64,000 nt of DNA, taken from positions 744,001 through 808,000 of the forward strand of contig NW_026782196.1 of NCBI RefSeq assembly GCF_031769215.1. The letters are read 5' to 3'. How positions within the stretch are numbered: the first letter of the stretch is position 1; each line of letters begins with the position of its first letter. The position numbers and the translations under genes are program-made. Shown here in pieces: positions 13,987 to 49,739 of this stretch. This DNA is from Ylistrum balloti (lineage: Eukaryota). A model generated the notes under the pieces. That model had not been told where the DNA came from. It saw nothing but the letters and a program-made list of their open reading frames with translations, and searched no databases.

Positions 13987-16900
13987 ATGCACACTGATAC
14001 TAATTCAGATGATGGTGACCTTTATAGTAGAACTGATTATACAACAGACAAGGAACGCCATTGTCGTCAAGGGGCTTCTGAAGAAAAAGTCCAATTCAGA
14101 CATGGAGCAGATGGTGTGTATAGTTCAGCCATGACAGATCTATCAACAGTCAGCGTGTCTTCTAAAAATGTCACCCAGAAAGACTTCACTCTCCAATCAG
14201 ATATGAACACTGAGATGTCATCATGTCATCTGAATGATGAGAAAACCTTTGCAAAAATTAATACAGAAAATTCATTTGATCATTATGAATGTGATAAAGA
14301 GACTGAAACTGGGGAAGAGGTGGATTATACACATTTAGTATCTGTTGTAGAAAATGACATAAAAAATATAAGTAATAGGATTAGCACTGCTGTGATTGAC
14401 TTCAGTTTCTCTTGTCAAGAAAAGGGAGAAGAAAATGGATCGCACTGTAATCATTTTGATTTTGTCCCAAATGAGATTATTCTGAAAATATTTTCCTATT
14501 TTGACCCCTTGGATTTATGTAAACAGATTTCACTTGTTAGTAAGCGATGGCGAAAGCTTGCGTACGATGTTAGTTTGTGGACTTTACTTGACTTGAATTG
14601 GAATCCACATTTATCATCAGTCAATTTGTGCTGGATCATCAAACGACTTGGATGTATTCGAAAACTTTGCCTTCAAAGCCGACAGATGCTGAGTGTTTCA
14701 GAAGTGTCTGTGTTTACAGAGTTCTGTCCCTTGCTAACAGATGTTGACCTGGGTTTTTGCAGTACTTGTTCTGCTGATATTCTTGAGTATTTTGTCCTCA
14801 ATTGTGAAAACCTGGAAAGAATCAATGTTGAAGGCTGTCACATGGTAGCTGATGAATGCTGTGAAGTACTGGCAAAGGCCAAAAGATTGAAACATTTGAA
14901 TTTTTCCCACTGTATTATAACAGATGCTGGCTTGTGTCACTTAGCTAGGAATTTGTCACAAATTGTCTCCCTCAATATTGATGGAATCGGATGGATAAAT
15001 GATAAGTAAGCATCTATTATTTGTTAATTATCGTTATATTCAGTGAAGCATTATTTGATATATATAAAAAAATTTTTTTTTTCAAATTGTCTTTTAAATG
15101 AGACACAAAGGAATTGAGGTCATTGAGAATTAGTGTTAGGATAGATGGCATTTTAAATAGGAATCATATATACTGAATTTTGCTATATTTGTCAAAGAGG
15201 TTGTGCAGGGGTTTTGCTATTATTTTGTTTTTGTCTTATAATAAACACATGGGGCTAATTCATATTCTCTTACTTAAAATTGGGAATTCAGTTGGCCTAT
15301 GTCTAGGGCCAGTGTTCCCATTGCCTTTTGAAACTTAAAGTATACTGCACTTATTGTGGGGTTTTGTATACTCATTTGGGGGTAATACGGAAACATTCCA
15401 GGGTTATACCTGTATTAGGGTTATTAGGACCTACCAAACCTGGGTTATTGCCTGATAAATGCAGTGATAGGACTAATAGCCAAAGCTATAAGTTATTTTT
15501 CCATTAATTGCATCATGTATACAATACCACTATTTTTTTTTCTGCCTATGATTTCCCTGAAGGAGTATGATAACTTTGGTAGAGCATCACCATGAAAACT
15601 TGAAATGGCTGGACATTGATGGTGCTGAGTTGACTGATCGGTCCATTGAAGCCGTAGCAGGTTGTTCTGGATTAGAGAGACTAACGGTGTCCTTCTGTGA
15701 ACTACTGACTGATACCTCGCTTCGAGAAGTATCGGTAAATATTCCTTTTTTTTTTCTCTCAATAGAGTTTCTCTCTTTCAATTTTATGTCAAGCAAGCAG
15801 ATCCCTAAACTGTTTGAGAGTAATCAGTCAGATTTGTTCTTTTGGAATATACATTCAAAAACTCATAGTTACAAGTTTTCACTGGTTGACAGTTTGTTTT
15901 CCTTACATGACAGAAAATGACTAAGCTAAACTGCTTGTCTCTGAGGAAAGGTACAGAGCTGACCAATGCAGGAGTGGTTGAGCTGTTCTCCACAGATGCC
16001 ATGTCAAATCTGACCTGCCTAGACCTATCTGATTGTGGAGACCTAAAAGATTCAGCTGTGCTACAAATCCTCAAATGGTAAAATTGTATCTAGTTACAGT
16101 AGTATCATCAACTATTACATATTTTCATAATCTCTGATACTTTATAGAAAAAAAGGATAATGCATTTATTTTATCTGTATGTTTGATGATTGTTTTGGCA
16201 AATATCTATGGAGTTTACCTGTATGTTTGATGATTGTTTTGGCAGATATGTATGGAATTTACCTGTATGTTTGCTGATTGTTTTGGCAGATATGTATGGA
16301 GTTTACCTGTATGTTTGATGATTGTTTTGGCAGATATGTATGGAATTTACCTGTATGTTTGCTTATTGTTTTGGCAAATATCTATGGAGTTTACCTGTAT
16401 GTTTGATGATTGTTTTGGCAGATATGTATGGAGTTTACCTGTATGTTTGCTGATTGTTTTGGCAGATATGTATGGAGTTTACCTGTATGTTTGATGATTG
16501 TTTTGGCAGATATGTATGGAGTTTACCTGTATGTTTGATGATTGTTTTGGCAGATATGTATGGAGTTTACCTGTATGTTTGATGATTGTTTTGGCAGATA
16601 TGTATGGAGTTTACCTGTATGTTTGATGATTGTTTTGGCAGATATGTATGGAGTTTACCTGTATGTTTGCTGATTGTTTTGGCAGATATGTATGGAATTT
16701 ACCTGTATGTATAATGAAACCATAATGTCATATGAACTTGAATGTATGTTGATATGTAGATAATCAGCATCTATTGAATGTATAGGTTACCTGGATATTT
16801 AACAATTTTATGGTATCATTACAGCGAAACTGTATTGATATCAGTTGTGAATTATCCTCTCATGAACTGCCAATGGTGTGGGAATATATAGCAAACAATA

Positions 16901-26113: not shown

Positions 26114-29100
26114 TCAACACAAATGCTTCTTGAGAAAGTCTACTGATAGCTGCCATGCGTTCCTTTGTGCTGCGGCGTGCTCCTTGGGATATCCTCCAGA
26201 CAGCAATAGATTATCTGAACATGATGTTTATAGATCACATTAGAACAAATGGTTTTCTTACAACTTTTCCATACATTTCATCATATTTTCTTCATATGAT
26301 AATTCATATTTAGCATAGGGCAATCTTTTTCTAAAACCTGAATGAAGTAATTATGTAGGAATATCATTTCTATGACAAAACATGGATATCTCAAATTGTC
26401 GTCCATAGTTGGTAAAAGATTTCTGAGGAAACTTCGCCTACAGTATAACTGTCATCGGTATATGTAAGTTCACCTGTTTGCTGTAGCAGCATTCAATAAA
26501 AACATAATGTCAAAATGTCAACAAAACTGATAATAGATATTAGCAGGAGTAAACAGCATACTATGAATGCAATGACTTCAAAATTTTACTTTGCTGAATG
26601 TCATGATTCAGATATTATCGAAACTGCTGTGTTCAAAAGCTTGAATTTCATGAATTTGATATTATCGAAACTGCCTATCAGAGAGTTTGTTCATCTTATA
26701 AGCATTAAAACAAAATTTAATCAGCCTAAAAATTAAATATATACAAATAAATACTTTCTTAGAGATACAATGTTTAAATATCCAAATCCTAGATGAATCC
26801 TGTAAATCCTCTTGTTATTTCGACAGTTCTGCAGCGTAAATAAACCTTCAGTACTAAAGATTAACCTATACATTATTTCGAGTCAAAATACAAAATCAGT
26901 ATCACACGTAAAAATGTAAAAAAAAATATGCATATGAGAACTTACAACTAGCACTCATGAATGGTCAACTCAGTGTGTGATAATGTATTACTGATGTTTT
27001 GTAGGAACTATTATGTCAACTGTTTGTATGAACTATTATGTCGACTATTGATGTTATGAATGGCGTCTTTGAAAAACTCACTATGTTGGTGTACGGGATT
27101 CTGTAGATGTAATGCCTGTTGGATCCTGTTAGCTGCCTCGACAACACGACACACTGGGGCGTGTGGCACCTCTATCAGATGTCCAGCTCCAGGATATACT
27201 ACAAACTCTGTTTTCTTTTGGCGATAATCTTGTGGCATGAATTCCTCATATAAGCGAACATTATATTCCATACGGGTCATGAGGTCATCGCCGCCGGATA
27301 TTGTCAGGAGGTGGGCGCCATGTGTCCAAGGCTACAAGAATACATGCATTCATTTCCTGACATAACTGTACATTCAAACATTCAAAGTAAGATATCAACA
27401 AGCGATCCAAGAGGGATATTAGCACCAACCAATGTATGATCTTTACTTGTTCTTTAGAAGTTGGATAATTTCTCCTTCTTTTCTCTTCTCTCCTCTGCTT
27501 TTGCTCTTAATGATACAAAATTACTTGGCAGAAATAGCAATAATAATCACCTGTCAAATCAAAGATGGCTGCCTGTCAGCCATTTTGTTTTTCTGATCAG
27601 TCCCAAAGTTACATTGGAACAACTAGAGTCCAAGGGGAAGCTACACATGAAATTTGAGAAAGATCTATGAAACATTTTTCAAGAAATAGCGGTAACAATC
27701 TTGCAAAGTCAAAATTCAAGACACCTGCCTATCGGCCATTTTGTTTATCTGATCAGGCCTAAATCTGAAAATAAGGACAAAGGGGAACCTTCATATGAAA
27801 GTTGGGAGAGCTCCATCCTGTACTTCCCAAGAAATATGTTAACAAATTTGCAAAGTCAAAATCCAAGGTGGCCACCTGTCGGCCATTTTGTTTTTCTGAT
27901 CAGACCCAAAATCAAATGAGCACAACTGTGGACCTAGGGGAACCTATATATATAATTTGAGAGAGATCCATTCAGTGATGTTTAAGAAATAGCAATAACA
28001 AACTTTCAAAGTCATGAGATCCATCAAGTTCTTAAGAAAAATAGTGATCAGTCCCAAACTCTATGGTACACATCTAGGGATGATGGGGTCCTACATAAGA
28101 AATATGAGAACTTCTGATGATGGTGGGCTGAAAAACAGCTGGAAATAAAGTTGGTCTAGAAACTGTCTCCAAAATTAGAGATGCTGTTTATGCTTTATTT
28201 CCTTCCATTTTTACTGATGATAAATTCAAAGTCTTTAATTTAGATATATACCAATCAGACATTTAGGTGAGGACACCTATAATTCAGTGTATGAGTGGCC
28301 AACTGACACTGCGGCTCAGTGGTATTAACTGAAACCATCTGAAAAGTCTTGACAACTATTTCTGAACAGAATTATTGTATGCTGATTTCACTTACTAGAT
28401 AGGTATTCAGTTTCTTTGTTCCAAACTCACCTTTAAAAAGGATTCGTCATGAACCACAAACATGTCCCTGACCGACAAACCTTCCTCCATTTTTTTAAAT
28501 CGTTCTATGTCGATCCTAGAAGGACAAAAACAACAAAGCAATATTGACATGTTCACAAAATATTTCTTCCTATTCACCGTAGATGTGAAAAAGGGCAAAA
28601 TATAAACAAGAGGAAGATTCACATAAAAATTCATGAATGTGAAAAGAAAATAACACCTGGCATTGTGGAAGGGTATTTCTTCTGCCCACCTCATGATTTT
28701 ATCACAAATCAATCACAGTTATGCCATATAAAAATGAGAACGAGGTTCATAACAACAAGACTACCAGACATACTGATGAGCATATAACATATCTAAAGAC
28801 AGCAAATTTTCCATTGAGATTGACAACCATTTAATACTATCTTAGTACCCATCATACTGCATCTCAGCTGAAGCCCTGTATTTTCAGTTTTTCTATCAGC
28901 TATGGATTTATGTTATGGAAACTGTGATACACCCTAAGTATAAATTGACTGTGATAGGTTGAAATGACAGTAAACATAATGTATTATAGAAAGAGAACAA
29001 TGGAGACATCACTATTCATGATGCTCTCAGTATTAAATAAATTGTACACAAATTGTCTGTGATAGGTTGAAATGACAGAAAACATAATGTATTATAGAAA

Positions 29101-32100
29101 GAGAACGATGGAGAGATCACTCTTCGTGACGCTCTCAGTAGCCATTTACAAAAGTGAAAATATACATGTAATGCAGTCATTTATAGATTGTTAAAAATTG
29201 AAAATAGTTTTAAGTGTAATTACTCCAGTGTTCTATTGATCAACAATGCTAAAAACACAAACACATCCTCTACACTGTATTAAGGAAGTAGATCAAGCAG
29301 TTACCAAGTTTTACATCCAATGTCAATTTTATTGTACGTCCAATTACTGTGAGTGTATGGCATTCCATTGATATTAACCACTGCTCTGACCTGGAATGAG
29401 AGGAATCTTTGTATTAATGAGTGAATCATCATATCTAAAAAAAGACTTGGTTCATATTAACTTCTCAACCCAACTGGGACGAAGGTCATAAATTTTATAG
29501 CACACCATCTAATCTCCTTACTATAATTTGTGTCACCTGTGGTGTATAAACAAAAACTGATTTCCACACACAAAGGATTGGGTTTTTGTATATAGACACA
29601 GATTTAATCAAAGCCTTCACTACAACATCAATCAACATATGAATTTGGAAGAGGGGAACTTACTCCCTGAATTATGTAACAGGTAAACATACGTTTGGAA
29701 TAGTCTGAGCCATCCACAATGCCATCGTTCCACCGAGACACAAAGACAACACACCAAGGCCATCTGAACGTACTTCTGGTAAACTAGCAAACCAATTTGC
29801 CGCATCCTGTATCACAAATTGAACAGCTTTTCTTTATTCTCCAATGAAGACAGGATTTAAGCACATCATACGATACATGTAGGTAAATCATGTGTCAATC
29901 ATGATATCTCGTCCTAAGCCCTAATTCTCCTTTACACACATGAAAACATACATGAAATATGCGTTTTAGAGTTTATATGTACATCTTTACTTGTGGAAAT
30001 AATTCCTACATCATTACATTGAATTTTCCTTTCGTATAATCTAGGCTGATCAACACAAATCTCATCTTCAGGATTCAAAACATTTTTGATTTTTGCCATA
30101 AGCCCATCAATGACATCATTATGGATTCTTTCTTCAAATGTAAATCTTTCAAAGAAAGCGTGCTTTATTGATTACCTCAAAATAATTTAGTTCGATGTTG
30201 AGCATTGTCTGTGGCAGATTCTTTCCGTTAACATATGACAAGGACAGAGTGGCAAATCCCTTGGATGCAAGCAGCGCTGCCCGTCCCTCCACGATTGCCA
30301 CCAGGCCACCGTACATATCAATGACCCCCGGGAAGGGACCTGGACCTGTGGTAGGAGTATCATATTAACTAGAATCAATCACAAATACCGTATAATTTTA
30401 CTAGACAAGATCGAAATCATCAATCTTCATTTCTATTATGCATATATATATAATTCAAAAAAGATAAAAACTTTGTGTATCGTATATATAGAAAATCAAA
30501 ACATTCACATGGCAAATAAAATCGTATGAAATCGCTGCTAACATTTTCCACAAGGCCGGAAAACATTAGCGGCCATTTCATACGATTTTATTTGCCATGT
30601 TAATATGTGAGAGATTGCCAGCCTTCACTTCAAGATCTCTCAATCATCACAATCAGCGAGAGATTGACAGCCTTCACTTCAAGATCTGTCAATCATCACA
30701 ATCAGTGACAGATTGACAGTCTTCACTTCAAGATCTGTCAATCATCACAATCAGTGAGAGATTGACAGCCTTCACTTCAAGATCTGTCAATCATCACAAT
30801 CAGTGACAGATTGACAGCCTTCACTTCAAGATCTGTCAATCATCACAATCAGTGAGAGATTGACAGTCTTCACTTCAAGATCTGTCAATCATCACAATCA
30901 GTGAGAGATTGACAGCCTTCACTTCAAGATCTGTCAATCATCACAATCAGTGAGAGATTGACAGCCTTCACTTCAAGATCTGTCAATCATCACAATCAGT
31001 GAGAGATTGACAGCCTTCACTTCAAGATCTGTCAATCATCACAATCAGTGAGAGATTGACAGCCTTCACTTCAAGATCTGTCAATCATCACAATCAGTGA
31101 GAGATTGACAGCCTTCACTTCAAGATCTGTCAATCATCACAAACAGTGAGAGATTGACAGCCTTCACTTCAAGATCTGTCAATCATCACAAACAGTGAGA
31201 GATTGACAGCCTTCACTTCAAGATCTGTCAATCATCACAATCAGTGAGAGATTGACAGCCTTCACTTCAAGATCTGTCAATCATCACAATCAGTGAGAGA
31301 CTGACAGCCTTCACTTCAAGATCTGTCAATCATCACAATCAGTGAGAGATTGACAGCCTTCACTTCAAGATCTGTCAATCTACTCGACCCAAACTCAAAC
31401 TGGCACAACTAGGATCCTAAAGGAACCTATACATAAAATTTGAGAAAGATCTATTCAGTAGTTCTCAAGATATAGTGATAACAAACATTCAAAGTCAAAA
31501 TCCAAGATGGCCACTTGTGGGCCATTTTGATTTTCTGATCAGACCCAAAATAACATGGGCACAACTAGAGACCAAGTGGAACCTACATATAAAATTTGAG
31601 AGAGATCCATCCTTGACTTTTTTGAGGAAATAGCGAAAACAAACTTCATTGAAAAAGTCCAAGATGGCTGCCTGTTGGCCAATTTTCTTGTTTTGATCAG
31701 TCCCAAAATTAAAATGGGCACAACTAGAGACCAAGGGAAACTTACATATACAATTTGAGAAAGGTCCATCCAGTGCTTCTCAAAAAAAATAGCCATAACA
31801 AATATTGTTTATGGATAGAATGATGCAGAGCGATTTGAATTGCCCACCATCTGATCAGAGTGGGCTAAAAAGATATGTAAATTTCTGTTTTAGAACAGCA
31901 ACGACATGAAAGTTTGGCAGCCATTACATTGAGGAAACAAATCCTGCTACCTTCACAGTTAAAACATAAAAGATCAAAGAATCTCTTGTTAGTACTAAAA
32001 AGGCCAGAAATCATCACATTTGTGAATCAGAAAAATGATCACACAATTGTCAATGTCAAAACATAAAAGATTAAGGACTAACTTCTGAGTCTAAACGTGA

Positions 32101-35100
32101 TAGATCGGGAAAATTCACAGTCATAAACAATAATGCAAACCTTAATAAAGATAATGTTATAAATGAGGTAGAGACACTTCAACAAATCTCAACGGTCAAC
32201 TTGTAAAGAGGCAGTCATCAGTCAGGTCGGGAATGTTAAGCAATCTCCACAGTCAAAAAGTTATAGATGAGCAATCATCAAATTTGGAACATAAAAAATC
32301 CTACAACATTCCATGAAAACATAGCTCATTTTCACAATCTAAATGAGAAAGTTAAAGGTCAGGCAATCTTCACAGTCAAATTGTGACACTTCACCAATTA
32401 TTACAGTGAGAAAATGTGAGAGATTAGGCAATGCTCACCATTACAATGTAAAACAATCCTCATATCGTGAAAGTGAAAGATACATAACACCTTGTCATAT
32501 AAATTTTGGATTAGATACAGTAGTGACAAACAATGAATTAAATACATCAAATAGCTGTTTCGCCCTTCTTAGACTCGTCAGTAATGGTATATCATACAGC
32601 TGTTTCATCCTTCTAGGATCCTTCAATATGTCCTACCTGCATAAATATGTTGTTGAATCTTAACTCTTCTGTTGAAATAGAAGTGAAATAAAACAAACTG
32701 AAGGCATACCTTCTGGTAGAAAGACAGTGCCTTGGAGTCGTGGATGTTCAACAGGTATTCGTCTTGTATCAGAAGATTTGTACCATCTTTTATGCTCAAC
32801 AGATGCGAACATTTTCGTTCTATCTTTGAGGTACTGACTTGGATCATCTGATTCTGGGAACACACTAAAGGTAAATATCCTTGGCTTGATAGCTCTGGCT
32901 TGGAACATGCGCCAATGTGCTGGTAACCATGGTGCTGCCACCATACTCCAAATTAAGCCTACAGGATCTGCTTCTGTTGGTGAAAACCATTTAACATTAA
33001 AGAGATACGAAGTTGAGTGATTTATACTTATCATAGATTAAATAATAACAGTGGGATAATATCTCAGATCTACTCAATATTTAGGCATTTTCTGACCAAC
33101 AAACTACGAAATCTAACCAGCTGCTAGACCATGTAGTTCTAGGAAATTTGAAAAAACAAATCTCCTTTGTCTGCTCTTTATTGTATTATGGAATAAAAAT
33201 AATGTGGAACATCAAATGGGTATTTTTTTTCTTGTCCTTTACTATCGTTACATCATGGAAAAAACAGATACTTTTCATTTCAATATTACTTCTAGATATC
33301 TTAGTCTTTTGTTATCTGTGGATTTCCCCTAGACCCTCCAGTAAGTCTTTTGTTATCTGTGGATTTCCCCAAGACCCTCCAGTAAGTCTTTTGTTATCTG
33401 TGGATTTCCCCTAGACCCTCCAGTAAGTCTTTTGTTATCGGTGGATTTCCCCAAGACCCTCCAGTAAGTCTTTTGTTATCTGTGGATTTCCCCTAGACCC
33501 TCCAGTAAGTCTTTTGTTATCTGTGGATTTCCCCTAGACCCTCCAGTAAGTCTTTTGTTATCTGTGGATTTCCCCTAGACCCTCCAGTAAGTCTTTTGTT
33601 ATCTGTGGATTTCCCCTAGACCCTCCAGTAAGTCTTTTGTTATCGGTGGATTTCCCCAAGACCCTCCAGTAAGTCTTTTGTTATCTGTGGATTTCCCCTA
33701 GACCCTCCAGTAAGTCTTTTGTTATCTGTGGATTTCCCCTAGACCCTCCAGTAAGTCTTTTGTTATCTGTGGATTTCCCCTAGACCCTCCATAAGTCTTT
33801 TGTCAGAATATACATTGCCTATATGATACTCTGATAAGTTAAACACCATTTTTATACAAGCCTCTCAATATTTAAGCATACATCTATAGACATCTGTTGA
33901 GAAGAGTTAAAGGTTTCCATATAACAATCCTTCATACCATCATAACTGCCGCTAATTGGTGTATCCGTGCTAAGATCTACAACACCACTGTCATTGGCTC
34001 GAAATACACCATGTGACCAAAAGAGATTTCCATCTATTTCTGTCGTAGCCAGGATTGTGACTTTTTCGCTTGGAGTCAATTTGGAAACTTTCACAACAAT
34101 GTCCTCATCCATCAAACACTCTGATTTGTCCACATTTAGTCCAATGCCTCGAATGAATGATGAAAAATGTCGAATAGGTTGAGTACATGTAGAATGGCAC
34201 TTTTGTAAGTGCAGTGCACATGATAAATTTTCATGAGCCAATGAACACATAAGTCGTCGTATAGTCTTTCGAGTCTGTAAAAAAAGAAAATGTTTTCACA
34301 TACTGAGCAAAGCAGAAATGAACTCCAGGGTACCACTCAATCATTAACCTTCCCCAAAAATTAAACACCATAATAATTAACGTGATTATGGACATATAAC
34401 CCAAATCAAGTCGTAATAGACAACATTTATTTCTCATTTGTATCTGTATTTACTACAATGTAGAAATGATATGATACACCACAGGTTATTTACTACAAAC
34501 AGGGGTCTATAAAGTAGAAAGGGGTTCTTTTCTATAGTAACACATGTATAAGGAAAGGTATGCAGAGTCATGCTCCATTTTGACTATTTCTATTACGTAA
34601 TTTACAGTGACAGATACTATGGACAGTAAAACCTTGACACCAGTGAGGTGTTCGCCATTTTGGTTGTATATCTGGCTGTGATAGATGCTGGACCATGTTT
34701 AGCCATTCATGGTCACTGTTATTAATTCAGTCTACAGCACACCTTATCTTCTTTCATGGGTGATCATGACTACATGACCATGAAAGTGGTTGTGTGCAGT
34801 AAACTGTTGCAACACAAAACAATAAGAAAATACCATTCTGTCAACATGACTGTTGCCTAAATTCAATAAAACTAGGGAACAAAAGAAAAAATAACACAGT
34901 GACTCACAAAACATCAGCAGAACTAATGCCAAATCAAGGAAGAAAAAAGTCCAAATAACGAAATGTTCATGTCAGTAGAACTATGATCAACATGAACAAA
35001 TCTGTAATTTACTTTTAAGAAAATGAAGTTATCTAGTTTTTTTCTGAACCATGTACGATTTATGCACTCTACATGGACCTGAGAATTTCACATAGGTACA

Positions 35101-35530
35101 GTCTAGGTTGATGATACACATGTTGTATATAGACAGTACTTTTAAACATCGTGTGTACTTATATGTGACGCAATGTCGCTTGCATAGAAATCTTTACTGG
35201 AAGTTAAAATTCTATACAATGCTTAGACATGTCCTTTTTCAAAATTACTGTAATCAAATCTGGCTTTCCGCTGATACTTTAGAACTTTAACCTACGCATG
35301 TTCATTTGTGTATCTGTGTGTACTGTGTGTAATTGTTGTATCTAACTAAACATTGTACGTACGTACCTCGACTCTTTTTAGTTGTAAATCTTAATCGACA
35401 GATGTTATTTGATAACAGCACACTCATGTTATTAGTTAAATTCCCATTGTACAAATGTCAAAATGGATACCTGCGAGTAATTCCATGAACGTCTCGGACA
35501 CAGTCCTAAAATTGAACAGCGTCTGAACAT
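26114..35530 (-). CDS. Type I acyl-CoA thioesterase / BAAT-family alpha/beta hydrolase, 9 exons, Cys nucleophile, predicted mitochondrial presequence
   Basis: Exons 35530-35471, 34274-33938, 32973-32710, 30345-30176, 29806-29693, 29390-29305, 28515-28431, 27331-27082, 26214-26114, all in phase. Motifs: DPVGLIWSM; GPGPFPGVIDMYGG...EGRAALLASKGFATLSLSY; GLGVLSLCLGG; VRAVVNING; ISGGDD (Asp); YPGAGHLIE (His); GGYPKEHAAAQRNAW. Exon 1 is less certain than the rest. Confidence 0.9.
27540..28090 (+). mobile_element. Non-autonomous dispersed repeat with ~135-bp internal subunits (copy 1)
   Basis: Recurring module CAAAGTCAAAATCCAAG(A/G)TGGC...GGCCATTTTGTTTTTCTGATCAG...CCCAAA; related to 31385-31865 and 52860-53830. 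Confidence 0.65.
30610..31380. repeat. 49-bp minisatellite with internal hairpin, about 15 copies
   Basis: Unit GAGAGATTGACAGCCTTCACTTCAAGATCTGTCAATCATCACAATCAGT; GATTGACAG and CTGTCAATC are reverse complements. Confidence 0.95.
31385..31865 (+). mobile_element. Non-autonomous dispersed repeat (copy 2)
   Basis: Same modules as 27540-28090 (AACTAG..CCAAGGGAAC, AAAGTCAAAATCCAAGATGGC, CTGATCAG.CCCAAAAT). Confidence 0.65.
33305..33800. repeat. 41-bp minisatellite, about 12 copies
   Basis: Unit TAGACCCTCCAGTAAGTCTTTTGTTATCTGTGGATTTCCCC. Confidence 0.95.
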
Positions 35531-35984: not shown

Positions 35985-37630
35985 TCCTCATCCCACTGCT
36001 AGTTTGACCAATCCGGCTACCGTAGCGGCCTCAGGAGATAAACTCCAACCGGCACAGCTCTCACTACCAGCTTCAGAGGAGATAGTCTGGATAAAAAGAA
36101 AGAGTTGATAGCCCCTGCTTGAAGGATACCAAGTCAGGGGCCTCAGCTGCAGTGGCTGGGAGAGAGTTCCAAAGTGGGATAGTAGATGGAAAGAAACTGT
36201 ACCTGAAAGTGCTTTTGGATGAGGGGAGATGAGAGAACTTTAGTGAGTGGTTCCTACGAGTGCAAGTTGTAGATGGTGTTAAGTAGGTTTCTGTTGTGAT
36301 ATCCACTAACTTGTGGGCAATCTTGTACATGATGGCGAGCTGGATCTTAAGCCGTCTTGATTTCAGTGTCTCCCATTGTAGAGTCTGCATCATCTCAGAT
36401 ACACTGCTGGTATTGCGAAATCTGTTGGTGGTGTACAGCACCGCTCTCCTTTGGACCATCTCAAGTTGGTCCACTTGTTTCTTGGTGTGTGGGCTCCACA
36501 CTGATGAGCAGTACTCTAAGGTTGGGCGAACAAATGTATAGTATGCGCGTGCCTTTATATCCTCATTGGAGATCTACAGGTTTCTTCTGAGGAAGCCAAG
36601 AGTGCTGTTTGCTTTCTTGCGTACTCTATCTATGTGGTGGTTCCAAGTTAAGTCTGCTGAGATATCCACCCTGAGATACTTGCTGGAATTAGTCTCCTCA
36701 AGTAAGTGTCCTTTAAGATGGTACCAGGCTTGGATGGTCTTCCTGTTCTTAGTGACCCTCAGAACACTACACTTGTCTGGGTGGAACTCCATACCCCACA
36801 GTTTTTCCCACTTTGCCAGCTCTGAAAGATCTGTTTTCAGTGTGTCAACATCTTCTTCTCCTCTCACTGTTCTGTAGACTATGCAGTCATCTGCGAAAAG
36901 TCTGACCTGGGACACTATGTTGTTGGGGAGGTCATTGATGAACAGTAGGAAGAGAAGAAGTCCGAGACAAGTCCCCTGAGGGACACCGCTGACAACTGGG
37001 GCTTCCTCCGACAACTTGCCCTCTACCATGACCTGCTGGGTTCGTCCTTCCAAGAAGCTCCTTATCCAGGATTGTGTCGGTCCTCTGATACCACAGAAGT
37101 CTAACTTCCTAAGCAACCGTCGGTGAGGTACCTGGTCAAAGGCTTTTGAAAAGTCCAGGATAATGAGATCTGTCTGGAGTCCCCTGTCGATGTTATTTGC
37201 CAGGTCATGGCATAGGGTGAGAAGTTGGGTCTCCCAGTCTCTTCTGGCCCTAAATCCATGCTGACAATCATTCAGGATGCTGTGCCTGTCTAGGTGGGAC
37301 ATTCGTCTTCTTCCACTCAGATGGTAATATTCCAGTGCTGAAGCAGCTGTGGTATATTCTTGTATATTCTTCCTCAGCAAGATTCTTTAGTAGCCTGGCA
37401 GAGATGTTGTCTGGACCGCTGGCCTTACTAAGATTGATGTTAAGCAGTAACTTTGTAACCCCTCTCTCTTCTATGGTGATGTTCTCTATGGAAGGATATG
37501 GTGTTCCTGGCAGTCCTGGGACAGATGACTGGTCCTCCTTAGTAAATACTGATTGGTACTGCCTATTGACGATGTTAGCCTTGTCCAAAGCATCTGAATG
37601 TAACTTCCCATCATCCTTCAAGGAGGCTAT
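35985..37630 (-). mobile_element. 5'-truncated CR1/L2-group LINE: ORF2 reverse-transcriptase fragment and 3' UTR
   Basis: KASGPDNISARLLK; QHGFR; DLIILDFSKAFDQVPH; GVPQGTCLGLLLFLLFINDL; LFADDC; KANSTLGFLRRNL; YTFVRPTLEYCSSVWSP; YSFFPSTIPLWNSLP. One in-frame stop near 36574 and an internal deletion with frameshift near 37290. Confidence 0.92.
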
Positions 37631-38304: not shown

Positions 38305-39495
38305 TACACCAGTTCAACATGGAACTCCTTAACACATCAAAATACCTCATCAGATCCCTATCCTGGTCATTGTCCTGATCCACCAGTTCACCATGGAACT
38401 CCTTAACACATCAAAATACCTCATCAGACCCCTATCCTGGTCATTGTCCTGATCCACCAGTTCACCATGGAACTCCTTAACACATCAAAATACCTCATCA
38501 GACCCCTATCCTGGTCATTGTCCTGATCCACCAGTTCACCATAGAACTCCTTAACACATCAAAATACCTCATCAGACCCCTATCCTGGTCATTGTCCTGA
38601 TCCACCAGTTCACCATAGAACTCCTTAACACATCAAAATACCTCATCAGACCCCTATCCTGGTCATTGTCCTGATCCACCAGTTCACCATAGAACTCCTT
38701 AACACATCAAAATACCTCATCAGACCCCTATCCTGGTCATTGTCCTGATCCACCAGTTCACCATAGAACTCCTTAACACATCAAAATACCTCATCAGACC
38801 CCTATCCTGGTCATTGTCCTGATCCACCAGTTCACCATAGAACTCCTTAACACATCAAAATACCTCATCAGACCCCTATCCTGGTCATTGTCCTGATCCA
38901 CCAGTTCACCATAGAACTCCTTAACACATCAAAATACCTCATCAGACCCCTATCCTGGTCATTGTCCTGATCCACCAGTTCACCATAGAACTCCTTAACA
39001 CATCAAAATACCTCATCAGACCCCTATCCTGGTCATTGTCCTGATCCACCAGTTCACCATGGAACTCCTTAACACATCAAAATACCTCATCAGACCCCTA
39101 TCCTGGTCATTGTCATGATCCACCAGTTCACATGGAACTCCTTAACACATCAAAATACCTCATCAGACCCCTATCCTGGTCATTGTCATGATCCACCAGT
39201 TCACCATGGAACTCCTTAACACATCAAAATACCTCATCAGACCCCTATCCTGGTCATTGTCCTGATCCACCAGTTCACCATGGAACTCCTTAACACATCA
39301 AAATACCTCATCAGACCCCTATCCTGGTCATTGTCATGATCCACCAGTTCACCATGGAACTCCTTAACACATCAAAATACCTCATCAGACCCCTAACTTG
39401 GTCATTGTCCTGATCCACCAGTTCACCATAGAACTCCTTAACACATCAAAATAGATCATCAGACCCCTATCCTGGTCATTGTCATGATCCACCAG
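38305..39495. repeat. 74-bp minisatellite, about 16 near-identical copies
   Basis: Unit CCAGTTCACCAT(A/G)GAACTCCTTAACACATCAAAATACCTCATCAGACCCCTATCCTGGTCATTGTC(C/A)TGATCCA; starts at 38383 and 38457 are 74 bp apart. Confidence 0.96.
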
Positions 39496-39882
39496 ATCAT
39501 CCATGGACTGAAGCCTGGCATATAACTTTACTAGTCCTCACTGGACATAACTACAATTAAATGGAAATTCTCCTTTATGTACTTCCAAAACCACCTATTA
39601 TACACTATGTTCTAAATTCATCCCTAATCAAATTACATATTTACAATTACTTCTCTACTCTGTTAATGATTATGCATAAATACAGCACAGGACACCTTAA
39701 TATACCAATGTGGCCCACATTACAGGCATGAAAACACATCACTAGACTAATGACACTAATATCATACTGACATTTGACGCTATACACAACATCAACTGAC
39801 GTATAATAATCCTAGAATACCACAAAATATCTGTAACTTCCACATAAAACACTGTATATTGCATAAAAGCTAATAATAGCAC

Positions 39883-40909: not shown

Positions 40910-42825
40910 TGTATACCACATGTACAAGTCTTCTTCTGTGATGTACACCATGTGTACAAGTCCTCTATGTCTGTATATCACCACGTGTACAAGTCCTATG
41001 TCTATACATCACCATGTGTACAAGTCCTCTGTGTCTATATATCACCATGTGTACAAGTCCTCTGTCTGTATATCACCATGTGTACAAGTCCTCTATGTCT
41101 GTATATCACCACGTGTACAAGTCCTATGTCTATACATCACCATGTGTACAAGTCCTATGTCTATATATCACCATGTGTACAAGTCCTCTGTGTCTATATA
41201 TCACCATGTGTACAAGTCCTCTGTGTCTATATATCACCATGTTTACAAGTCCTCTATGTCTGTATATCACCACGTGTACAAGTCCTATGTCTATATATCA
41301 CCATGTGTACAAGTCCTATGTCTATATATCACCATGTGTACAAGTCCTCTGTGTCTATATATCACCATGTGTACAAGTCCTCTGTGTCTATATATCACCA
41401 TGTGTACAAGCCCTTTGTGTCTATATATCACCATGTGTACAAGTCCTCTGTGTCTATATATCACCATGTGTACAAGTCCTCTGTGTCTATATCACCATGT
41501 GTACAAGTCCTCTATGTCTGTATATCATCATGTGTACAAGTCCTCTGTATCTGTATATCACCATGTTTACAATTCCTTTGTGTCTATATATCACCATGTG
41601 TACAAGTCCTCTGTGTCTATATATCACCATGTGTACAAGTCCTCTGTGACTGTATATCACCATGTGTACACGTCCTCTGTCTGTATATCACCATGTGTAC
41701 AAGTCCTCTATGTCTGTATATCACCATGTTTAGTCCTCTTTGTCTATATATCACCATGTGTACAAGTCCTCTGTGTCTATATACCACCATGTGTACAAGT
41801 CCTCTGTCTGTATATCACCATGTGTTCAAGTCCTCTATGTCTGTATATCACCATGTGTACAAGTCCTCTGTATCTGTATATCACCATGTGTACAAGTCCA
41901 CTGTGTCTATATATCACCATGTGTACAATTCCTCTGTGTCTATATATCACCATGTGTACAAGTCCTCTGTGTCTATATATCACCATGTGTACAAGTCCTC
42001 TGTGTCTATATATCACCATGAGTACAAGTCCTCTGTGTCTATATCACCATGTGTACAAGTCCTCTATGTCTGTATATCACCATGTTTACAAGTCCACTGT
42101 GTCTATATATCACCATGTGTACAATTCCTTTGTGTCTATATATCACCATGTGTACAAGTCCTCTGTGTCTATATATCACCATGTGTACAAGTCCTCTGTG
42201 ACTGTATATCACCATGTGTACACGTCCTCTGTCTGTATATCACCATGTTTAGTCCTCTGTGTCTATATATCACCATGTGTACAAGTCCTCTGTGTCTATA
42301 TATCACCATGTGTACAAGTCCTCTGTCTGTATATCACCATGTATTCAAGTCCTCTATGTCTGCATATCACCATGTGTACAAGTCCTCTGTATCTGTATAT
42401 CACCATGTTTACAAGTCCACTGTGTCTATATATCACCATGTGTACAATTCCTCTGTGTCTATATATCACCATGTGTACAAGTCCTCTGTGTCTATATATC
42501 ACCATGTGTACAAGTCCTCTGTCTGTATATCACCATGTGTAAAAGTCCTCTATGTCTGTATATCACCATGTTTAGTCCTGTGTCTATATATCACCATGTG
42601 TACAAGTCCTCTGTGTCTATATATCACCATGTGTACAAGTCCTCTGTCTGTATATCACCATGCTTACAAGTCCTCTGTGTCTATATATCACCATGTTTAC
42701 AAGTCCTCTGTGTCTATATATCACCATGTTTACATGTCCTCTGTGTCTATATATCACCATGTGTACAAGTCCTCTGTGTCTATATATCACCATGTGTACA
42801 AGTCCTGTGTGTGTAGATATCACCA
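40910..42825. repeat. ~31-35-bp minisatellite (core 33 bp), about 58 copies, with higher-order duplication
   Basis: Unit ATCACCATGTGTACAAGTCCTCTGTGTCTATAT plus length variants; source of the spurious 540- and 625-aa ORFs. Confidence 0.96.
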
Positions 42826-43711
42826 GTGAACAACCAACAGAGCTTCTCACTAGTAAGCTGGAGGTTTCTGGTTTTAGGCACACTAATTGTTTTCATGTTG
42901 CCATAGCATTGTTAACAATAAGCTCCCAATTGTTCAAATGCTGGTTAAAGAGTGGTTGGTGAAAATTTTTGCAACATTGATCAATAGATATTGGGAATAT
43001 TCTCTTTCGTTTCACAGTTGTAGATTTGATTAGACAGGTCAGATTTATATATTTCAAGTGGTAGCTTTCCTTTTGTTTATTTATTACCAACAATTCAGAT
43101 TTTTTCATTACCAGCTGATTAACTAACCTTTCAGCAAAATATTTCAGTTTGACAATCTGAAATAGATCAACCAATTAGAGACTCAGTTTCTGTAACCGTG
43201 GCAACAATTTGTAAAAAATCAAGACCTAAAGACACAACACCAGAGCTTGCTTCTGTTAAATGTAAAGTTTAGTTATATTAGCCTACAAGTATCTGAGTAG
43301 TTGTCTGTGCAAACATTGATATATTATTTGACAAAGCCCGATAGCTCCATAAGAAAATATCAGAATGAAAAAATTACACTCAAAGAGTGTAGAACAACTG
43401 ATCTATATGCAATAATTAAGATATATGTGAAGTTTCATTGAAAACTGACTAAGAGAGTAGGAAAATTCTTAGGTTAAGTTCTGTCAACAGATAGACTGAA
43501 AGACAGACAAGCTGATATCAGTATAACTCCCCATCCTAACTACATTACAAGGGTATGACAATATGTTAGTTGTCGGTATTTTACAAATATTCTATAATTA
43601 CAACAGATCACATAGCATATGTTTGATACCAGTAACCAACCATGTAGTTCTCTATAACAAAAAGGTGAAAGAAATAAGCTATTCAACAACATTATATTTA
43701 TTGATAAAAAA

Positions 43712-48380: not shown

Positions 48381-49739
48381 ATGATTGCTATAACCTACAT
48401 CACCTTTGTGGTAATGCTATGTCTTTGTGGAGCATTTCAGTTTTTGGCATACCAAAGAAGGAAAGACTTCTCGGAGGGAAACAATCCACAGTTCCTAAAA
48501 TTCCAGCATGGCTATTTTGCGGCATACCTTATGGCTGTGTTTGCTGATTGGTTGCAGGGCCCTTACTTGTACAAGCTATATTCATATTATGGGTACCAAG
48601 AGGCACAGATAGCAACTCTATATGCAGTGGGATTTGCTTCAACCATAATTCTTGGTACATGGACTCCAATCGCTGCAGATCAATTCGGACGCAAGAAACT
48701 GTGTCTGCTATTCACAGTCCTGTATTCCATTTCCTGTCTGATGAAACTATCCACTGGGTATGGTATTTTATTGATAGGAAGAATTGTCGGTGGAATTGCT
48801 ACCTCTGTGTTGTTTTCTGCTTTTGAAGCCTGGTACATTCACGAACATTTAGAAACTCATGACTTTCCAAAAGAATGGATTTCAGTCACATTTGCCAAAG
48901 CTTCTACATGGAATGGTGTTCTGGCGGTATTAGCTGGAGTGTCTTCCAATTTGGTGTCAGAAGGATTTGGATTAGGGCCAGTCGCTCCCTATATGCTTGC
49001 CATTCCATTTCTCATTTTCTCTGGTATAATGGTGTCCACACACTGGACAGAAAATTACAGTGTTAATAAAATTAAATTCAAAAAATTATGTGGTGAAGGC
49101 TTTAAGATGATAGTGACAAAGGAAGAAATTTTCATGTTGGGAGCTATTGAGGCTCTGTTTGAAAGTGTGATCTACATTGTGATCTTCCTGTGGACACCTA
49201 TATTGCAGTCTGGTAATCCTTCTCTTGGAATTGTGTTTTCAAGTTTTATGGCTAGCATATTAGTAGGGCAAGGATTTTTCTCAGTAGTATCAACTTCAAG
49301 ACGTTTCCAACCTTCTGCTTTACTCATGGTATCTATAGTAATGGCAGTGATCGCAAACCTTCTGCTTATTATATCCACACACCCTGAGAAGAGGGATGCA
49401 TCACTCTCGTTCTCTGCTTTGACTTTATTTGAGGTTGCAGTAGGAATATATTTTCCAGCAATGGGATACCTGCGGAGTCGTATTATTCCAGATTCCCATC
49501 GTTGGGGAGTGATCAATTGGTTCCGTGTGCCTATAAATCTGATCGCTTGTGTGATATTGATGCTACTACATGAAGATATTTTTCAGCATGGCAACAGAAT
49601 GATCTTTGTCCTCTGCCTTTTCCTTCTCCTTCTTGCTGTTGCAAGTGGAGCTAGATTTCTCAAGGTCACCAAAGACGATGACCGGTTGAAACAGGAAGCA
49701 GCATGGCTTGAGAGTGACCACATACACAACATCTTCTGA
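48381..49739 (+). CDS. MFSD5: Molybdate-anion transporter (MFS family), single coding exon, 452 aa
   Basis: NPQFLKFQ..YFAAYLMAVFADWLQGPYLYKLYSYYG; LIGRIVGGIATSVLFSAFEAWYIHEH; LFESVIYIVIFLWTP; GIYFPAMGYLRSRIIP; INWFRVPIN; many TM helices. Confidence 0.95.
   Translation: MIAITYITFVVMLCLCGAFQFLAYQRRKDFSEGNNPQFLKFQHGYFAAYLMAVFADWLQGPYLYKLYSYYGYQEAQIATLYAVGFASTIILGTWTPIAADQFGRKKLCLLFTVLYSISCLMKLSTGYGILLIGRIVGGIATSVLFSAFEAWYIHEHLETHDFPKEWISVTFAKASTWNGVLAVLAGVSSNLVSEGFGLGPVAPYMLAIPFLIFSGIMVSTHWTENYSVNKIKFKKLCGEGFKMIVTKEEIFMLGAIEALFESVIYIVIFLWTPILQSGNPSLGIVFSSFMASILVGQGFFSVVSTSRRFQPSALLMVSIVMAVIANLLLIISTHPEKRDASLSFSALTLFEVAVGIYFPAMGYLRSRIIPDSHRWGVINWFRVPINLIACVILMLLHEDIFQHGNRMIFVLCLFLLLLAVASGARFLKVTKDDDRLKQEAAWLESDHIHNIF

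What the first reader, a model, noticed from the sequence alone, without database searches (positions are those of the whole stretch)
29693..29806. ACOT-family enzyme with the BAAT-type S-x-C-x-G cysteine nucleophile in an invertebrate
Seen: exon 5 encodes GLGVLSLCLGGTMALWMA (Ser codon 29746-29744, Cys codon TGT 29740-29738), and the triad Asp (GGDD) and His (GAGHLIE) are intact. Established: type I ACOTs use G-x-S-x-G, whereas bile acid-CoA:amino acid N-acyltransferase (BAAT) uses S-x-C-x-G, and Cys-to-Ser substitution shifts BAAT toward thioesterase activity; the related mouse ACNAT1 makes N-acyl taurines. Inference: this may be an acyl-CoA:amino acid (taurine/glycine) N-acyltransferase in an animal without vertebrate bile acids. 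Marine molluscs are taurine-rich, so N-acyl-taurine synthesis or acyl detoxification is plausible, either by convergence or as an ancient BAAT-like lineage.
Basis: partly seen in the sequence, partly recalled or inferred. Interest (0 to 1): 0.7.

Follow-up and report, generated by a model that had tools for sequence, protein, structure and literature searches.

The report
Scallop acyl-CoA enzyme with cysteine nucleophile
This scallop gene encodes an acyl-CoA thioesterase/BAAT-family enzyme whose catalytic serine is replaced by cysteine; it belongs to an old, uncharacterised group found across bivalves that acquired the cysteine independently of vertebrate bile-acid conjugating enzymes and is a testable candidate for making fatty acid-taurine amides.

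Summary
Exon 29806-29693 (minus strand) encodes S-L-C-L-G. The Cys codon TGT (29740-29738) aligns with the nucleophile Ser of human ACOT2, and the Asp and His are intact.

The gene has 9 coding exons (35530-26114, 1467 nt, all GT-AG). It carries both family domains, PF04775 and PF08840. The genome is Ylistrum balloti.

The cysteine is neither an error nor unique. A second Cys-type paralogue and four Ser-type paralogues lie in the same genome. The gene falls in one bivalve clade (scallops, unionids, venerids, Mya, Mactra, Dreissena): 21 Cys and 3 Ser among 24 sampled.

All 24 members share three further changes:
- a remodelled glycine loop (G-x-x-G-G becomes G-G-[LIV]-V-x);
- a 9-14 residue insert after the His loop;
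- loss of the peroxisomal C-terminal signal.

The clade nests among Ser-type mollusc genes. AU tests reject joining it to the vertebrate BAAT/ACNAT clade, so this is convergence with BAAT, not an ancient BAAT lineage.

N-acyltransferase activity is plausible but untested. Nucleophile identity is a poor predictor: mouse ACNAT1 uses Ser, and mammalian BAAT toggles between Cys and Ser.

NCBI already labels relatives "BAAT-like".

The parts
35471..35530 (-). Probable coding exon 1. It starts with ATG and encodes 20 basic, acid-free residues of the N-terminal extension.
   Evidence: ORF followed by a GT donor in phase 0. Weak tblastn similarity to the N-termini of scallop relatives P0098, P0102 and P0001. 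This is the least certain exon.
33938..34274 (-). Coding exon 2: the rest of the N-terminal extension and the first half of the Bile_Hydr_Trans domain.
   Evidence: PF04775 positions 1-58, E 2.4e-14. tblastn with scallop proteins. AG/GT splice sites.
32710..32973 (-). Coding exon 3: second half of the Bile_Hydr_Trans domain, up to F-L-P-E.
   Evidence: PF04775 positions 60-125. 79-84% identity to the closest scallop relatives P0001, P0098 and P0099.
30176..30345 (-). Coding exon 4: start of the alpha/beta-hydrolase domain.
   Evidence: tblastn 81-86% identity to scallop proteins P0001, P0098, P0099 and P0101. Splice sites.
30296..30310 (-). Remodelled loop G-G-L-V-A, where nearly all other family members have x-x-G-G-x. 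It is the presumed oxyanion-hole loop after strand beta3.
   Evidence: Alignment of 106 family members: all 24 of the bivalve Cys clade have V at the first G-G position, and none of the other 82 does. In the model of orthologue P0099 the segment lies between strand 230-236 and helix 246-252. The oxyanion role is inferred from general alpha/beta-hydrolase topology.
29693..29806 (-).
29738..29740 (-). TGT, the catalytic cysteine at the nucleophile elbow.
   Evidence: Aligned with the Ser of ACOT2 G-I-S-K-G. In the model of orthologue P0099 the equivalent Cys305 sits between strand 294-304 and helix 306-317.
29305..29390 (-). Coding exon 6.
   Evidence: tblastn 70-79% identity to P0098, P0099 and P0101. 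Splice phases.
28431..28515 (-). Coding exon 7.
   Evidence: tblastn 47-60% identity. Splice phases.
27082..27331 (-). Coding exon 8, holding the catalytic Asp (GAC 27286-27284) and His (CAT 27181-27179).
   Evidence: PF08840 positions 115-174. Alignment to ACOT4 GQDD and GTGHYIE. Codons.
27098..27139 (-). Clade-specific insert of about 14 residues after the His loop (after P-V-C-R-V-V).
   Evidence: Present, at 9-14 residues, in every bivalve Cys-clade member shown in the alignment and in none of the other family members shown there. Predicted as short helices with pLDDT 86-91 in the P0099 model.
26114..26214 (-). Coding exon 9: C-terminal helix, ending H-L-C then TGA. No PTS1.
   Evidence: PF08840 positions 181-208. 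Stop codon.

Best explanation
SHOWN. This is an intact 9-exon gene of the type I acyl-CoA thioesterase/BAAT family in the scallop Ylistrum balloti, encoding 488 residues. It has the N-terminal Bile_Hydr_Trans domain and the C-terminal alpha/beta-hydrolase domain, with a Cys-Asp-His triad.

It belongs to a bivalve-wide subfamily that shares four features:
- Cys as nucleophile, with occasional reversion to Ser;
- a remodelled glycine loop next to the active site;
- an insert after the His loop;
- loss of the peroxisomal C-terminal signal.

The subfamily arose inside the Ser-type mollusc genes, independently of vertebrate BAAT.

INFERRED. The enzyme takes the acyl group of an acyl-CoA onto the cysteine as a thioester acyl-enzyme. 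It then passes the acyl group to an amine acceptor abundant in bivalve cells (taurine, glycine or a relative), making N-acyl amino acids, rather than to water. I put about 50% on amine transfer as the main outcome, about 35% on plain thioesterase activity, and the rest on other acceptors or substrates.

The basic, disordered N-terminal extension of about 65 residues suggests a mitochondrial location for this paralogue. The lack of PTS1 argues against a peroxisomal one.
For: Gene and family:
- Gene model and splice phases.
- Family domains on the separate exons.
- Triad alignment to ACOT2 and ACOT4.
- The model of orthologue P0099 (pLDDT 89, pTM 0.86) puts Cys at the strand-helix elbow and matches ACOT2/ACOT4 at TM 0.90-0.92.

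The cysteine is real and conserved:
- Same genome: a second Cys-type gene on C6, identical to NCBI's "BAAT-like [Ylistrum balloti]" P0104, plus four Ser-type genes.
- One bivalve Cys clade (SH-aLRT 95) with 21 Cys and 3 Ser, branching roughly as bivalve orders do.

The subfamily is distinct:
- Shared loop change, insert and non-PTS1 ends.
- Not a BAAT lineage: AU p 0.0001 and 0.008.

For amine transfer:
- The only characterised Cys enzymes of the family are transferases. The BAAT Cys-to-Ser mutant gains hydrolase activity (PMC6934887).
- Thioester acyl-enzymes favour aminolysis over hydrolysis (general enzymology, my knowledge).
- N-palmitoyltaurine was putatively detected in a scallop (PMC8703567).
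- The invertebrate N-acyl taurine synthase is stated to be unknown (PMC13050040).
Against: - There is no biochemical datum for any member of the clade.
- Cys is not needed for transfer (mouse ACNAT1 has Ser) and does not predict conjugation in mammals (PMC6934887).
- Three clade members reverted to Ser, including the closest relative of this gene found here (P0098).
- Cys also toggles in fish ACOT-like paralogues of unknown function.
- Cys-His-Asp alpha/beta hydrolases that simply hydrolyse exist (dienelactone hydrolase; weak DLH match).
- The fatty acyl taurine-type detergents and N-acyl taurines cited for invertebrates (crustacean intestinal detergent, a sea urchin, a sponge) come from groups in which I saw only Ser-type members or none. 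So this clade cannot be the general invertebrate enzyme.
- The oxyanion-loop assignment and the mitochondrial targeting are inferences.
- Transcription and the codon in RNA were not checked for this species.
Confidence: 0.5

Rival explanations
1. It is simply an acyl-CoA thioesterase that uses Cys instead of Ser. Water resolves the acyl-thioester intermediate, and the Cys/Ser choice is nearly neutral or tunes the rate or redox sensitivity.
For: - Thioesterase is the family's default activity, and the closest solved structures are thioesterases.
- Ser and Cys interchange at least 10-11 times on the trees, including within the clade and between recent fish paralogues.
- The closest relative found here, in Pecten maximus, has Ser in the same motif.
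- Cys-type hydrolases such as dienelactone hydrolase exist in the same fold.
Against: - Cys has been kept in 21 of 24 members since before the bivalve orders split.
- Nearly all sampled members outside the BAAT clade, the bivalve Cys clade and a few scattered Cys lineages keep Ser.
- The change came with a remodelled active-site loop and an insert shared by the whole clade, which argues for a changed reaction or substrate rather than drift.
- In BAAT the Ser variant is the more hydrolytic one (PMC6934887).
Confidence: 0.35
2. It is an acyl-transfer or hydrolytic enzyme acting on other substrates or acceptors. Examples are conjugation of dietary or xenobiotic carboxylic acids for detoxification, transfer to alcohols or other amines, or lactone/ester hydrolysis as in dienelactone hydrolases.
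For: - Lineage-specific expansion: at least 5 copies in Mercenaria, 3 in Mya and 2-3 in scallops. This is typical of detoxification families.
- The remodelled loop and insert are compatible with a new substrate pocket.
- There is weak DLH-family similarity at the nucleophile exon.
Against: - The N-terminal Bile_Hydr_Trans domain is conserved, and the overall fold matches the ACOT2 and ACOT4 structures closely.
- The DLH match is below Pfam's cut-off (16.7 against 21 bits).
Confidence: 0.12
3. The cysteine codon is a sequencing, assembly or individual-specific variant, or the gene is an unexpressed pseudogene.
For: No RNA or read evidence could be obtained for this species. The closest relative found has Ser, one base away (TCT against TGT).
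Against: - All nine exons are open, with canonical splice sites and consistent phases.
- A paralogue in the same genome and orthologues in Mizuhopecten and Argopecten carry Cys.
- Full-length Cys-type proteins of relatives sit on Logan contigs of 1.5-1.9 kb. For genes with 8 introns these can only be spliced transcripts. This last step is an inference.
Confidence: 0.03

Closest known systems
[quoted passage not shown]
   Same: Same two-domain family (PF04775 plus PF08840). Same triad positions. The same S-x-C-x-G motif as placental BAAT. Cys/Ser toggling among close relatives, as in mammalian BAAT/BAATP1.
   Different: - Not the same lineage: AU tests reject a joint clade.
- BAAT keeps the G-G loop and lacks the insert.
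- Most sampled BAAT and BAAT-like sequences end in a PTS1-type tripeptide (-SQL, -SKL, -NKL), whereas this protein ends -HLC and has a long N-terminal extension.
- The activity of the scallop protein is unknown.
[quoted passage not shown]
   Same: Same family. It catalyses the reaction proposed here for the scallop enzyme (fatty acyl-CoA plus taurine).
   Different: ACNAT1 has Ser, not Cys, at the nucleophile and is an orthologue of human BAATP1 (PMC6934887). It belongs to the vertebrate BAAT clade. It is peroxisomal (title of Reilly et al. 2007, as cited).
Human ACOT2 and ACOT4 (type I acyl-CoA thioesterases; PDB 3HLK, 3K2I)
   Same: Closest solved structures: E 1.4e-54 and TM 0.90-0.92 for orthologue P0099. 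ACOT2 is deposited as the mitochondrial enzyme; that it, too, carries an N-terminal leader is from my memory.
   Different: ACOT2 and ACOT4 have a Ser nucleophile in G-x-S-x-G and an intact G-G-G loop, and they lack the insert after the His loop. They are hydrolases.
Dienelactone hydrolases (Cys-His-Asp alpha/beta hydrolases, PF01738)
   Same: Same fold. A Cys nucleophile in a C-x-G-G context: m3DLH reads F-C-F-G-G-T opposite this exon's L-C-L-G-G-T.
   Different: They are single-domain, mostly bacterial enzymes that hydrolyse lactones. The match is below Pfam's cut-off and structural similarity is far lower (TM about 0.65 on the target).

Membership tests
Type I ACOT/BAAT family (Pfam PF04775 + PF08840) | N-terminal Bile_Hydr_Trans domain | tested here: met
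   Exons 2 and 3 match PF04775 positions 1-58 (53.7 bits) and 60-125 (31 bits), both over the 27-bit cut-off.
Type I ACOT/BAAT family (Pfam PF04775 + PF08840) | C-terminal BAAT_C alpha/beta-hydrolase domain | tested here: met
   Exons 5, 8 and 9 match PF08840 positions 8-43, 115-174 and 181-208, each over the 20.9-bit cut-off. The orthologue model matches ACOT2/ACOT4 at TM 0.90-0.92.
Type I ACOT/BAAT family (Pfam PF04775 + PF08840) | Nucleophile-Asp-His triad at the conserved positions | tested here: met
   Cys (29740-29738), Asp (27286-27284) and His (27181-27179) align with the ACOT2/ACOT4 triad positions. The nucleophile is Cys rather than Ser.
Vertebrate BAAT/ACNAT clade | Common descent with BAAT/ACNAT to the exclusion of the thioesterase clades | tested here: not met
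   The bivalve Cys clade nests among mollusc Ser-type genes. Holding it together with the BAAT/ACNAT clade costs 72 and 81 log-likelihood units, p-AU 0.0001 and 0.008. The window protein itself was placed through its per-exon best matches, not as a joined sequence.
Vertebrate BAAT/ACNAT clade | S-x-C-x-G nucleophile motif | tested here: met
   The window has S-L-C-L-G. Placental BAAT reads S-[IV]-C-K-G. The motif is not constant within the BAAT clade: marsupials have S-V-S-[QR]-G and birds, turtles and hedgehog have G-V-S-K-G.
Vertebrate BAAT/ACNAT clade | Peroxisomal targeting signal 1 at the C-terminus | tested here: not met
   The protein ends H-L-C. None of the 24 clade members has an [SAC]-[KRH]-[LM] end, whereas most Ser-type mollusc members and BAATs do.
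Vertebrate BAAT/ACNAT clade | [quoted passage not shown] | not testable with these tools
   This needs the recombinant enzyme assayed with acyl-CoA with and without taurine or glycine.
   The window exons show L-C-L-G-G, M-Y-G-G-L-V-A, the insert after P-V-C-R-V-V, and the -HLC end.
Dienelactone hydrolase family (PF01738) | Pfam DLH domain over the cut-off | tested here: not met
   The nucleophile exon scores 16.7 bits against a 21-bit cut-off. The resemblance is analogy of fold and nucleophile, not membership.

The most novel reading that the evidence does not exclude
The bivalve Cys-type subfamily to which this gene belongs is a convergently evolved, non-peroxisomal acyl-CoA:taurine/glycine N-acyltransferase. 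That would make it a missing invertebrate N-acyl amino acid (N-acyl taurine) synthase, built on the same scaffold as BAAT but with its own active-site remodelling (loss of the G-G loop and a new insert).
Probability: 0.4. Interest if true: 0.7.

Novelty: new variant of a known kind. Interest (0 to 1): 0.5.

Why it matters
N-acyl taurines and related fatty acid-amino acid amides are signalling lipids and detergents. A 2026 paper (PMC13050040) states that the BAAT/FATP5 conjugation machinery is vertebrate-only and that the enzyme making such conjugates in invertebrates is unknown.

A conserved, expanded, cysteine-type branch of the same enzyme family in taurine-rich bivalves gives that question a concrete candidate, testable with a simple assay.

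It would also be a natural experiment in how a serine thioesterase scaffold is converted to a cysteine enzyme twice. In vertebrates the change is at the nucleophile alone. In bivalves it comes with a remodelled loop and an insert.

If the enzymes prove to be plain thioesterases, the finding reduces to a sequence curiosity in a family where Ser and Cys interchange often.

Tried and rejected
The codon in RNA therefore remains unchecked.
- Joined protein model. Exons were searched one by one by reference. Database proteins of relatives (P0098, P0099, P0104 and others) stood in for the whole protein in the trees and the fold.
- Sequencing error or pseudogene. Rejected on the grounds of the paralogue, the orthologues and the intact frame.
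- Ancient BAAT-like lineage. Rejected by the tree and the AU tests.
- Single origin of Cys in all molluscs. Not settled: joining the bivalve clade to the heterobranch gastropod Cys clade is not rejected (p-AU 0.43), but those gastropod proteins lack the insert and two of the three keep the G-G loop.
- Sites shared convergently by the bivalve Cys clade and the BAAT clade. The strict scan flagged only two clade-specific columns, and at both the BAAT clade keeps the common residue. Position -2 (S or A instead of G) is shared by scallops and many BAAT-clade members but not by the rest of the bivalve clade.
- Literature. Searches for a described mollusc Cys-type ACOT/BAAT enzyme, for an ACOT2 oxyanion-hole description and for invertebrate taurine N-acyltransferase found nothing usable in the held library.
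- Earlier scan notes. The notes near this place concern other genes, and a word search found nothing.
Full report
**1. The observation**

On the minus strand, 29806-29693 is an open exon bounded by AG and GT.

The exon matches Pfam BAAT_C positions 8-43 over the curated cut-off. It aligns to residues 228-260 of human ACOT2, with the Cys opposite the Ser of G-I-S-K-G. Exon 27331-27082 carries G-G-D-D and G-A-G-H-L-I-E, which align with G-Q-D-D and G-T-G-H-Y-I-E of ACOT4. The invariant Asp is GAC 27286-27284 and the His is CAT 27181-27179.

**2. The gene**

Open stretches, splice sites and tblastn with scallop proteins give nine coding exons on the minus strand:

| Exon | Coordinates |
|---|---|
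| 1 | 35530-35471 |
| 2 | 34274-33938 |
| 3 | 32973-32710 |
| 4 | 30345-30176 |
| 5 | 29806-29693 |
| 6 | 29390-29305 |
| 7 | 28515-28431 |
| 8 | 27331-27082 |
| 9 | 26214-26114 |

All introns are GT-AG and the phases are consistent. The total is 1467 nt, or 488 codons plus TGA. Exon 1 rests on weak similarity and is the least certain.

Exons 2 and 3 match Bile_Hydr_Trans (PF04775). Exons 5, 8 and 9 match BAAT_C (PF08840).

I did not send a joined model to any search or folding tool; database proteins of relatives stood in for the whole protein.

**3. Whose genome, and how many copies**

A search of the window's own assembly found six family genes:
- this gene, on contig C339;
- one on C6;
- three in a cluster on C763;
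- one on C144.

Their nucleophile exons read S-L-C-L-G (window, TGT), S-L-C-L-G (C6, TGC), and G-L-S-K-G, G-V-S-K-G, A-T-S-K-G and A-N-S-K-G (all TCY).

[quoted passage not shown] The animal is therefore that scallop. The cysteine is a property of two genes in this genome, not a base-calling slip.

**4. Relatives**

An exhaustive HMMER search with exon 2 and three word-seeded searches gave about 350 family proteins. The window gene is closest to Pecten maximus P0098 (about 73% identity summed over the exons), followed by Mizuhopecten P0099 and Argopecten P0101/P0146.

I read the residue aligned with the Cys in every protein. Cys occurs in:
- scallops (Mizuhopecten twice, Argopecten, Ylistrum twice, one transcript contig);
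- unionids (Sinanodonta, Potamilus; two genes each);
- venerids (Mercenaria, four genes; Ruditapes, two);
- Mya (three genes), Mactra and Dreissena;
- three heterobranch gastropods (Aplysia, Biomphalaria, Elysia);
- a brittle star;
- several teleost ACOT-like paralogues;
- frogs, and placental BAAT (sloth, aardvark, elephant shrew).

Ser occurs in P0098 of Pecten maximus, in an otherwise near-identical motif, in Mizuhopecten P0103 and in Mercenaria P0291.

NCBI's pipeline already calls many of these proteins "BAAT-like" or "ACNAT-like". Those are best-hit names, not tests.

**5. Phylogeny**

The nucleophile residue was masked in both trees.

The 76-row tree (LG+C20 PMSF, quick search) gave these groupings:
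- Scallops plus unionids form a starred clade, nested in a mollusc clade of Ser-type genes.
- The vertebrate BAAT/ACNAT clade groups with vertebrate ACOT1-like and crustacean genes.

The 106-row tree (LG+G4, quick search) agrees on that placement and adds:
- There is one bivalve Cys clade (SH-aLRT 95; 21 Cys, 3 Ser).
- Inside it, scallops branch first, and unionids are sister to the Dreissena, Mya, Mactra and venerid genes. That is roughly the order of the bivalve groups themselves.
- Its sister is a Ser-type group containing Octopus.

AU tests:

| Grouping held together | Log-likelihood cost | p-AU |
|---|---|---|
| Bivalve Cys clade + vertebrate BAAT/ACNAT clade (76 rows) | 72 | 0.0001 |
| Bivalve Cys clade + vertebrate BAAT/ACNAT clade (106 rows) | 81 | 0.008 |
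| Bivalve Cys clade + heterobranch gastropod Cys clade | 3.95 | 0.43 |

The whole tree needs at least 10-11 Ser/Cys changes.

So the cysteine is old within bivalves, predating the split of scallops, unionids and the Dreissena-Mya-Mactra-venerid group. It was gained independently of BAAT. Both trees are quick searches with SH-aLRT support only.

**6. What else defines the clade**

In the 106-protein alignment, all 24 clade members, including the three Ser revertants, share further changes:
- G-G-[LIV]-V-x replaces the usual x-x-G-G-x in the loop after the strand F-P-G-V-I-D-M. All 24 have V at the first G-G position, and none of the other 82 proteins, animal or bacterial, does.
- Every clade member displayed has an insert of 9-14 residues after the His loop, and no other displayed member has it.
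- No clade member ends in a PTS1-like tripeptide, whereas most Ser-type mollusc members end -SKL, -SRL or -SQL.

The window gene has all of these: M-Y-G-G-L-V-A at 30296-30310, the insert at 27139-27098, and the end -H-L-C.

An AlphaFold2 model of orthologue P0099 (pLDDT 89, pTM 0.86) gives the following picture:
- The Cys sits at the classic strand-nucleophile-helix elbow.
- The changed loop lies between strand 230-236 and helix 246-252.
- The insert forms short helices.
- Residues 1-57 are disordered.

Foldseek puts ACOT2 and ACOT4 far ahead of everything else (TM 0.90-0.92).

That the changed loop is the oxyanion-hole loop is my inference from general alpha/beta-hydrolase topology. I found no paper in the library to confirm it for this family.

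The first 73 residues of the window protein (all of exon 1 and the first 53 residues of exon 2) hold 12 Lys/Arg and 3 Asp/Glu. That is compatible with a mitochondrial presequence, as in ACOT2, but I had no predictor to test it.

**7. How it most likely works**

Shown: an intact Cys-Asp-His triad on the ACOT fold.

Inferred: acyl-CoA acylates the Cys to give a thioester intermediate, which is resolved by an amine or by water.

For amine transfer:
- The only characterised Cys members, the BAATs, are transferases. The human C235S mutant loses glycine conjugation and gains hydrolase activity (PMC6934887).
- Thioester acyl-enzymes generally favour aminolysis (my knowledge).
- Cys has been kept in most clade members, together with a remodelled active-site surround.
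- Bivalve tissues are rich in taurine and glycine (my knowledge).
- N-palmitoyltaurine was putatively found in the scallop Mimachlamys varia (PMC8703567).
- A 2026 paper states that BAAT and FATP5 are vertebrate-only and that other enzymes must make invertebrate conjugates (PMC13050040).

Against:
- Mouse ACNAT1 transfers to taurine using Ser.
- In 118 mammals, Cys or Ser predicts the conjugation pattern poorly (PMC6934887).
- Ser revertants occur inside the clade.
- Cys hydrolases exist in this fold.
- The sources cited for invertebrate fatty acyl taurine-type compounds (crustacean detergent, a sea urchin, a sponge) are groups where I saw only Ser-type genes or none.
[quoted passage not shown] That family is an alternative source of such amides in molluscs.

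My estimate is about 50% amine transfer, 35% thioesterase and 15% other.

**8. Comparison and novelty**

The gene is a member of the type I ACOT/BAAT family. It is not a member of the BAAT/ACNAT lineage, although it shares the S-x-C-x-G motif with placental BAAT.

The sequences are public and automatically named. I found no paper that describes or assays the mollusc Cys-type branch.

I rate it a new variant of a known kind: a convergent Cys-type subfamily with its own active-site remodelling and a different cellular address, and with its function open.

**9. Limits**

- No RNA or read evidence could be obtained.
- The absence of Cys-type genes from oysters and mussels is only "not among the listed hits".

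Noticed in passing
window 30607-31380, 33303-33803 and 38307-39507: There are three well-kept minisatellites: 49 bp x 15.8 and 41 bp x 12.2 copies in introns of this gene (both 97% matches), and 74 bp x 16.2 copies (98% matches) about 3 kb upstream of exon 1. The 41-bp array produces the repeated open frames seen.
   Followed up: no
window 36574-37380 (-): A reverse-transcriptase fragment (RVT_1, E 5e-24) lies about 1 kb upstream of the probable first exon. It is a retroelement remnant in the promoter region.
   Followed up: no
window 13987-15009 (+) and 48381-49739 (+): Two neighbouring genes. One is a 340-aa open frame with an F-box and the start of leucine-rich repeats. The other is a 452-aa single open frame matching MFS_5 (E 1e-75), an MFSD5-type transporter.
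   Followed up: no
window 40920-42829 (+): There are overlapping open frames of 540 and 625 aa with no Pfam match. Their nature is unknown; they may belong to a mobile element.
   Followed up: no
database proteins P0001 (Pecten maximus) and P0100 (Mizuhopecten yessoensis): These annotated models of clade members skip the nucleophile exon (P0001 also skips the next one), so the predicted proteins lack the catalytic residue. They are either mis-predictions or nucleophile-less isoforms.
   Followed up: partly
database proteins P0173 (Haliotis rufescens) and P0348 (Pelusios castaneus): These family members have Ala or Gly at the nucleophile position while keeping Asp and His. They may be pseudo-enzymes or sequence errors.
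   Followed up: no
database proteins P0323, P0333, P0349 (Aplysia, Biomphalaria, Elysia) and P0179 (Amphiura): These are further invertebrate Cys-nucleophile members outside the bivalve clade. The three heterobranch gastropod proteins form their own clade (SH-aLRT 100), and the brittle-star protein ends -SKL. All lack the bivalve insert.
   Followed up: partly
G000 contig C763, about 582-628 kb: Three Ser-type family genes lie in a tandem cluster in the same genome. Their nucleophile motifs are G-L-S-K-G, G-V-S-K-G and A-T-S-K-G.
   Followed up: partly
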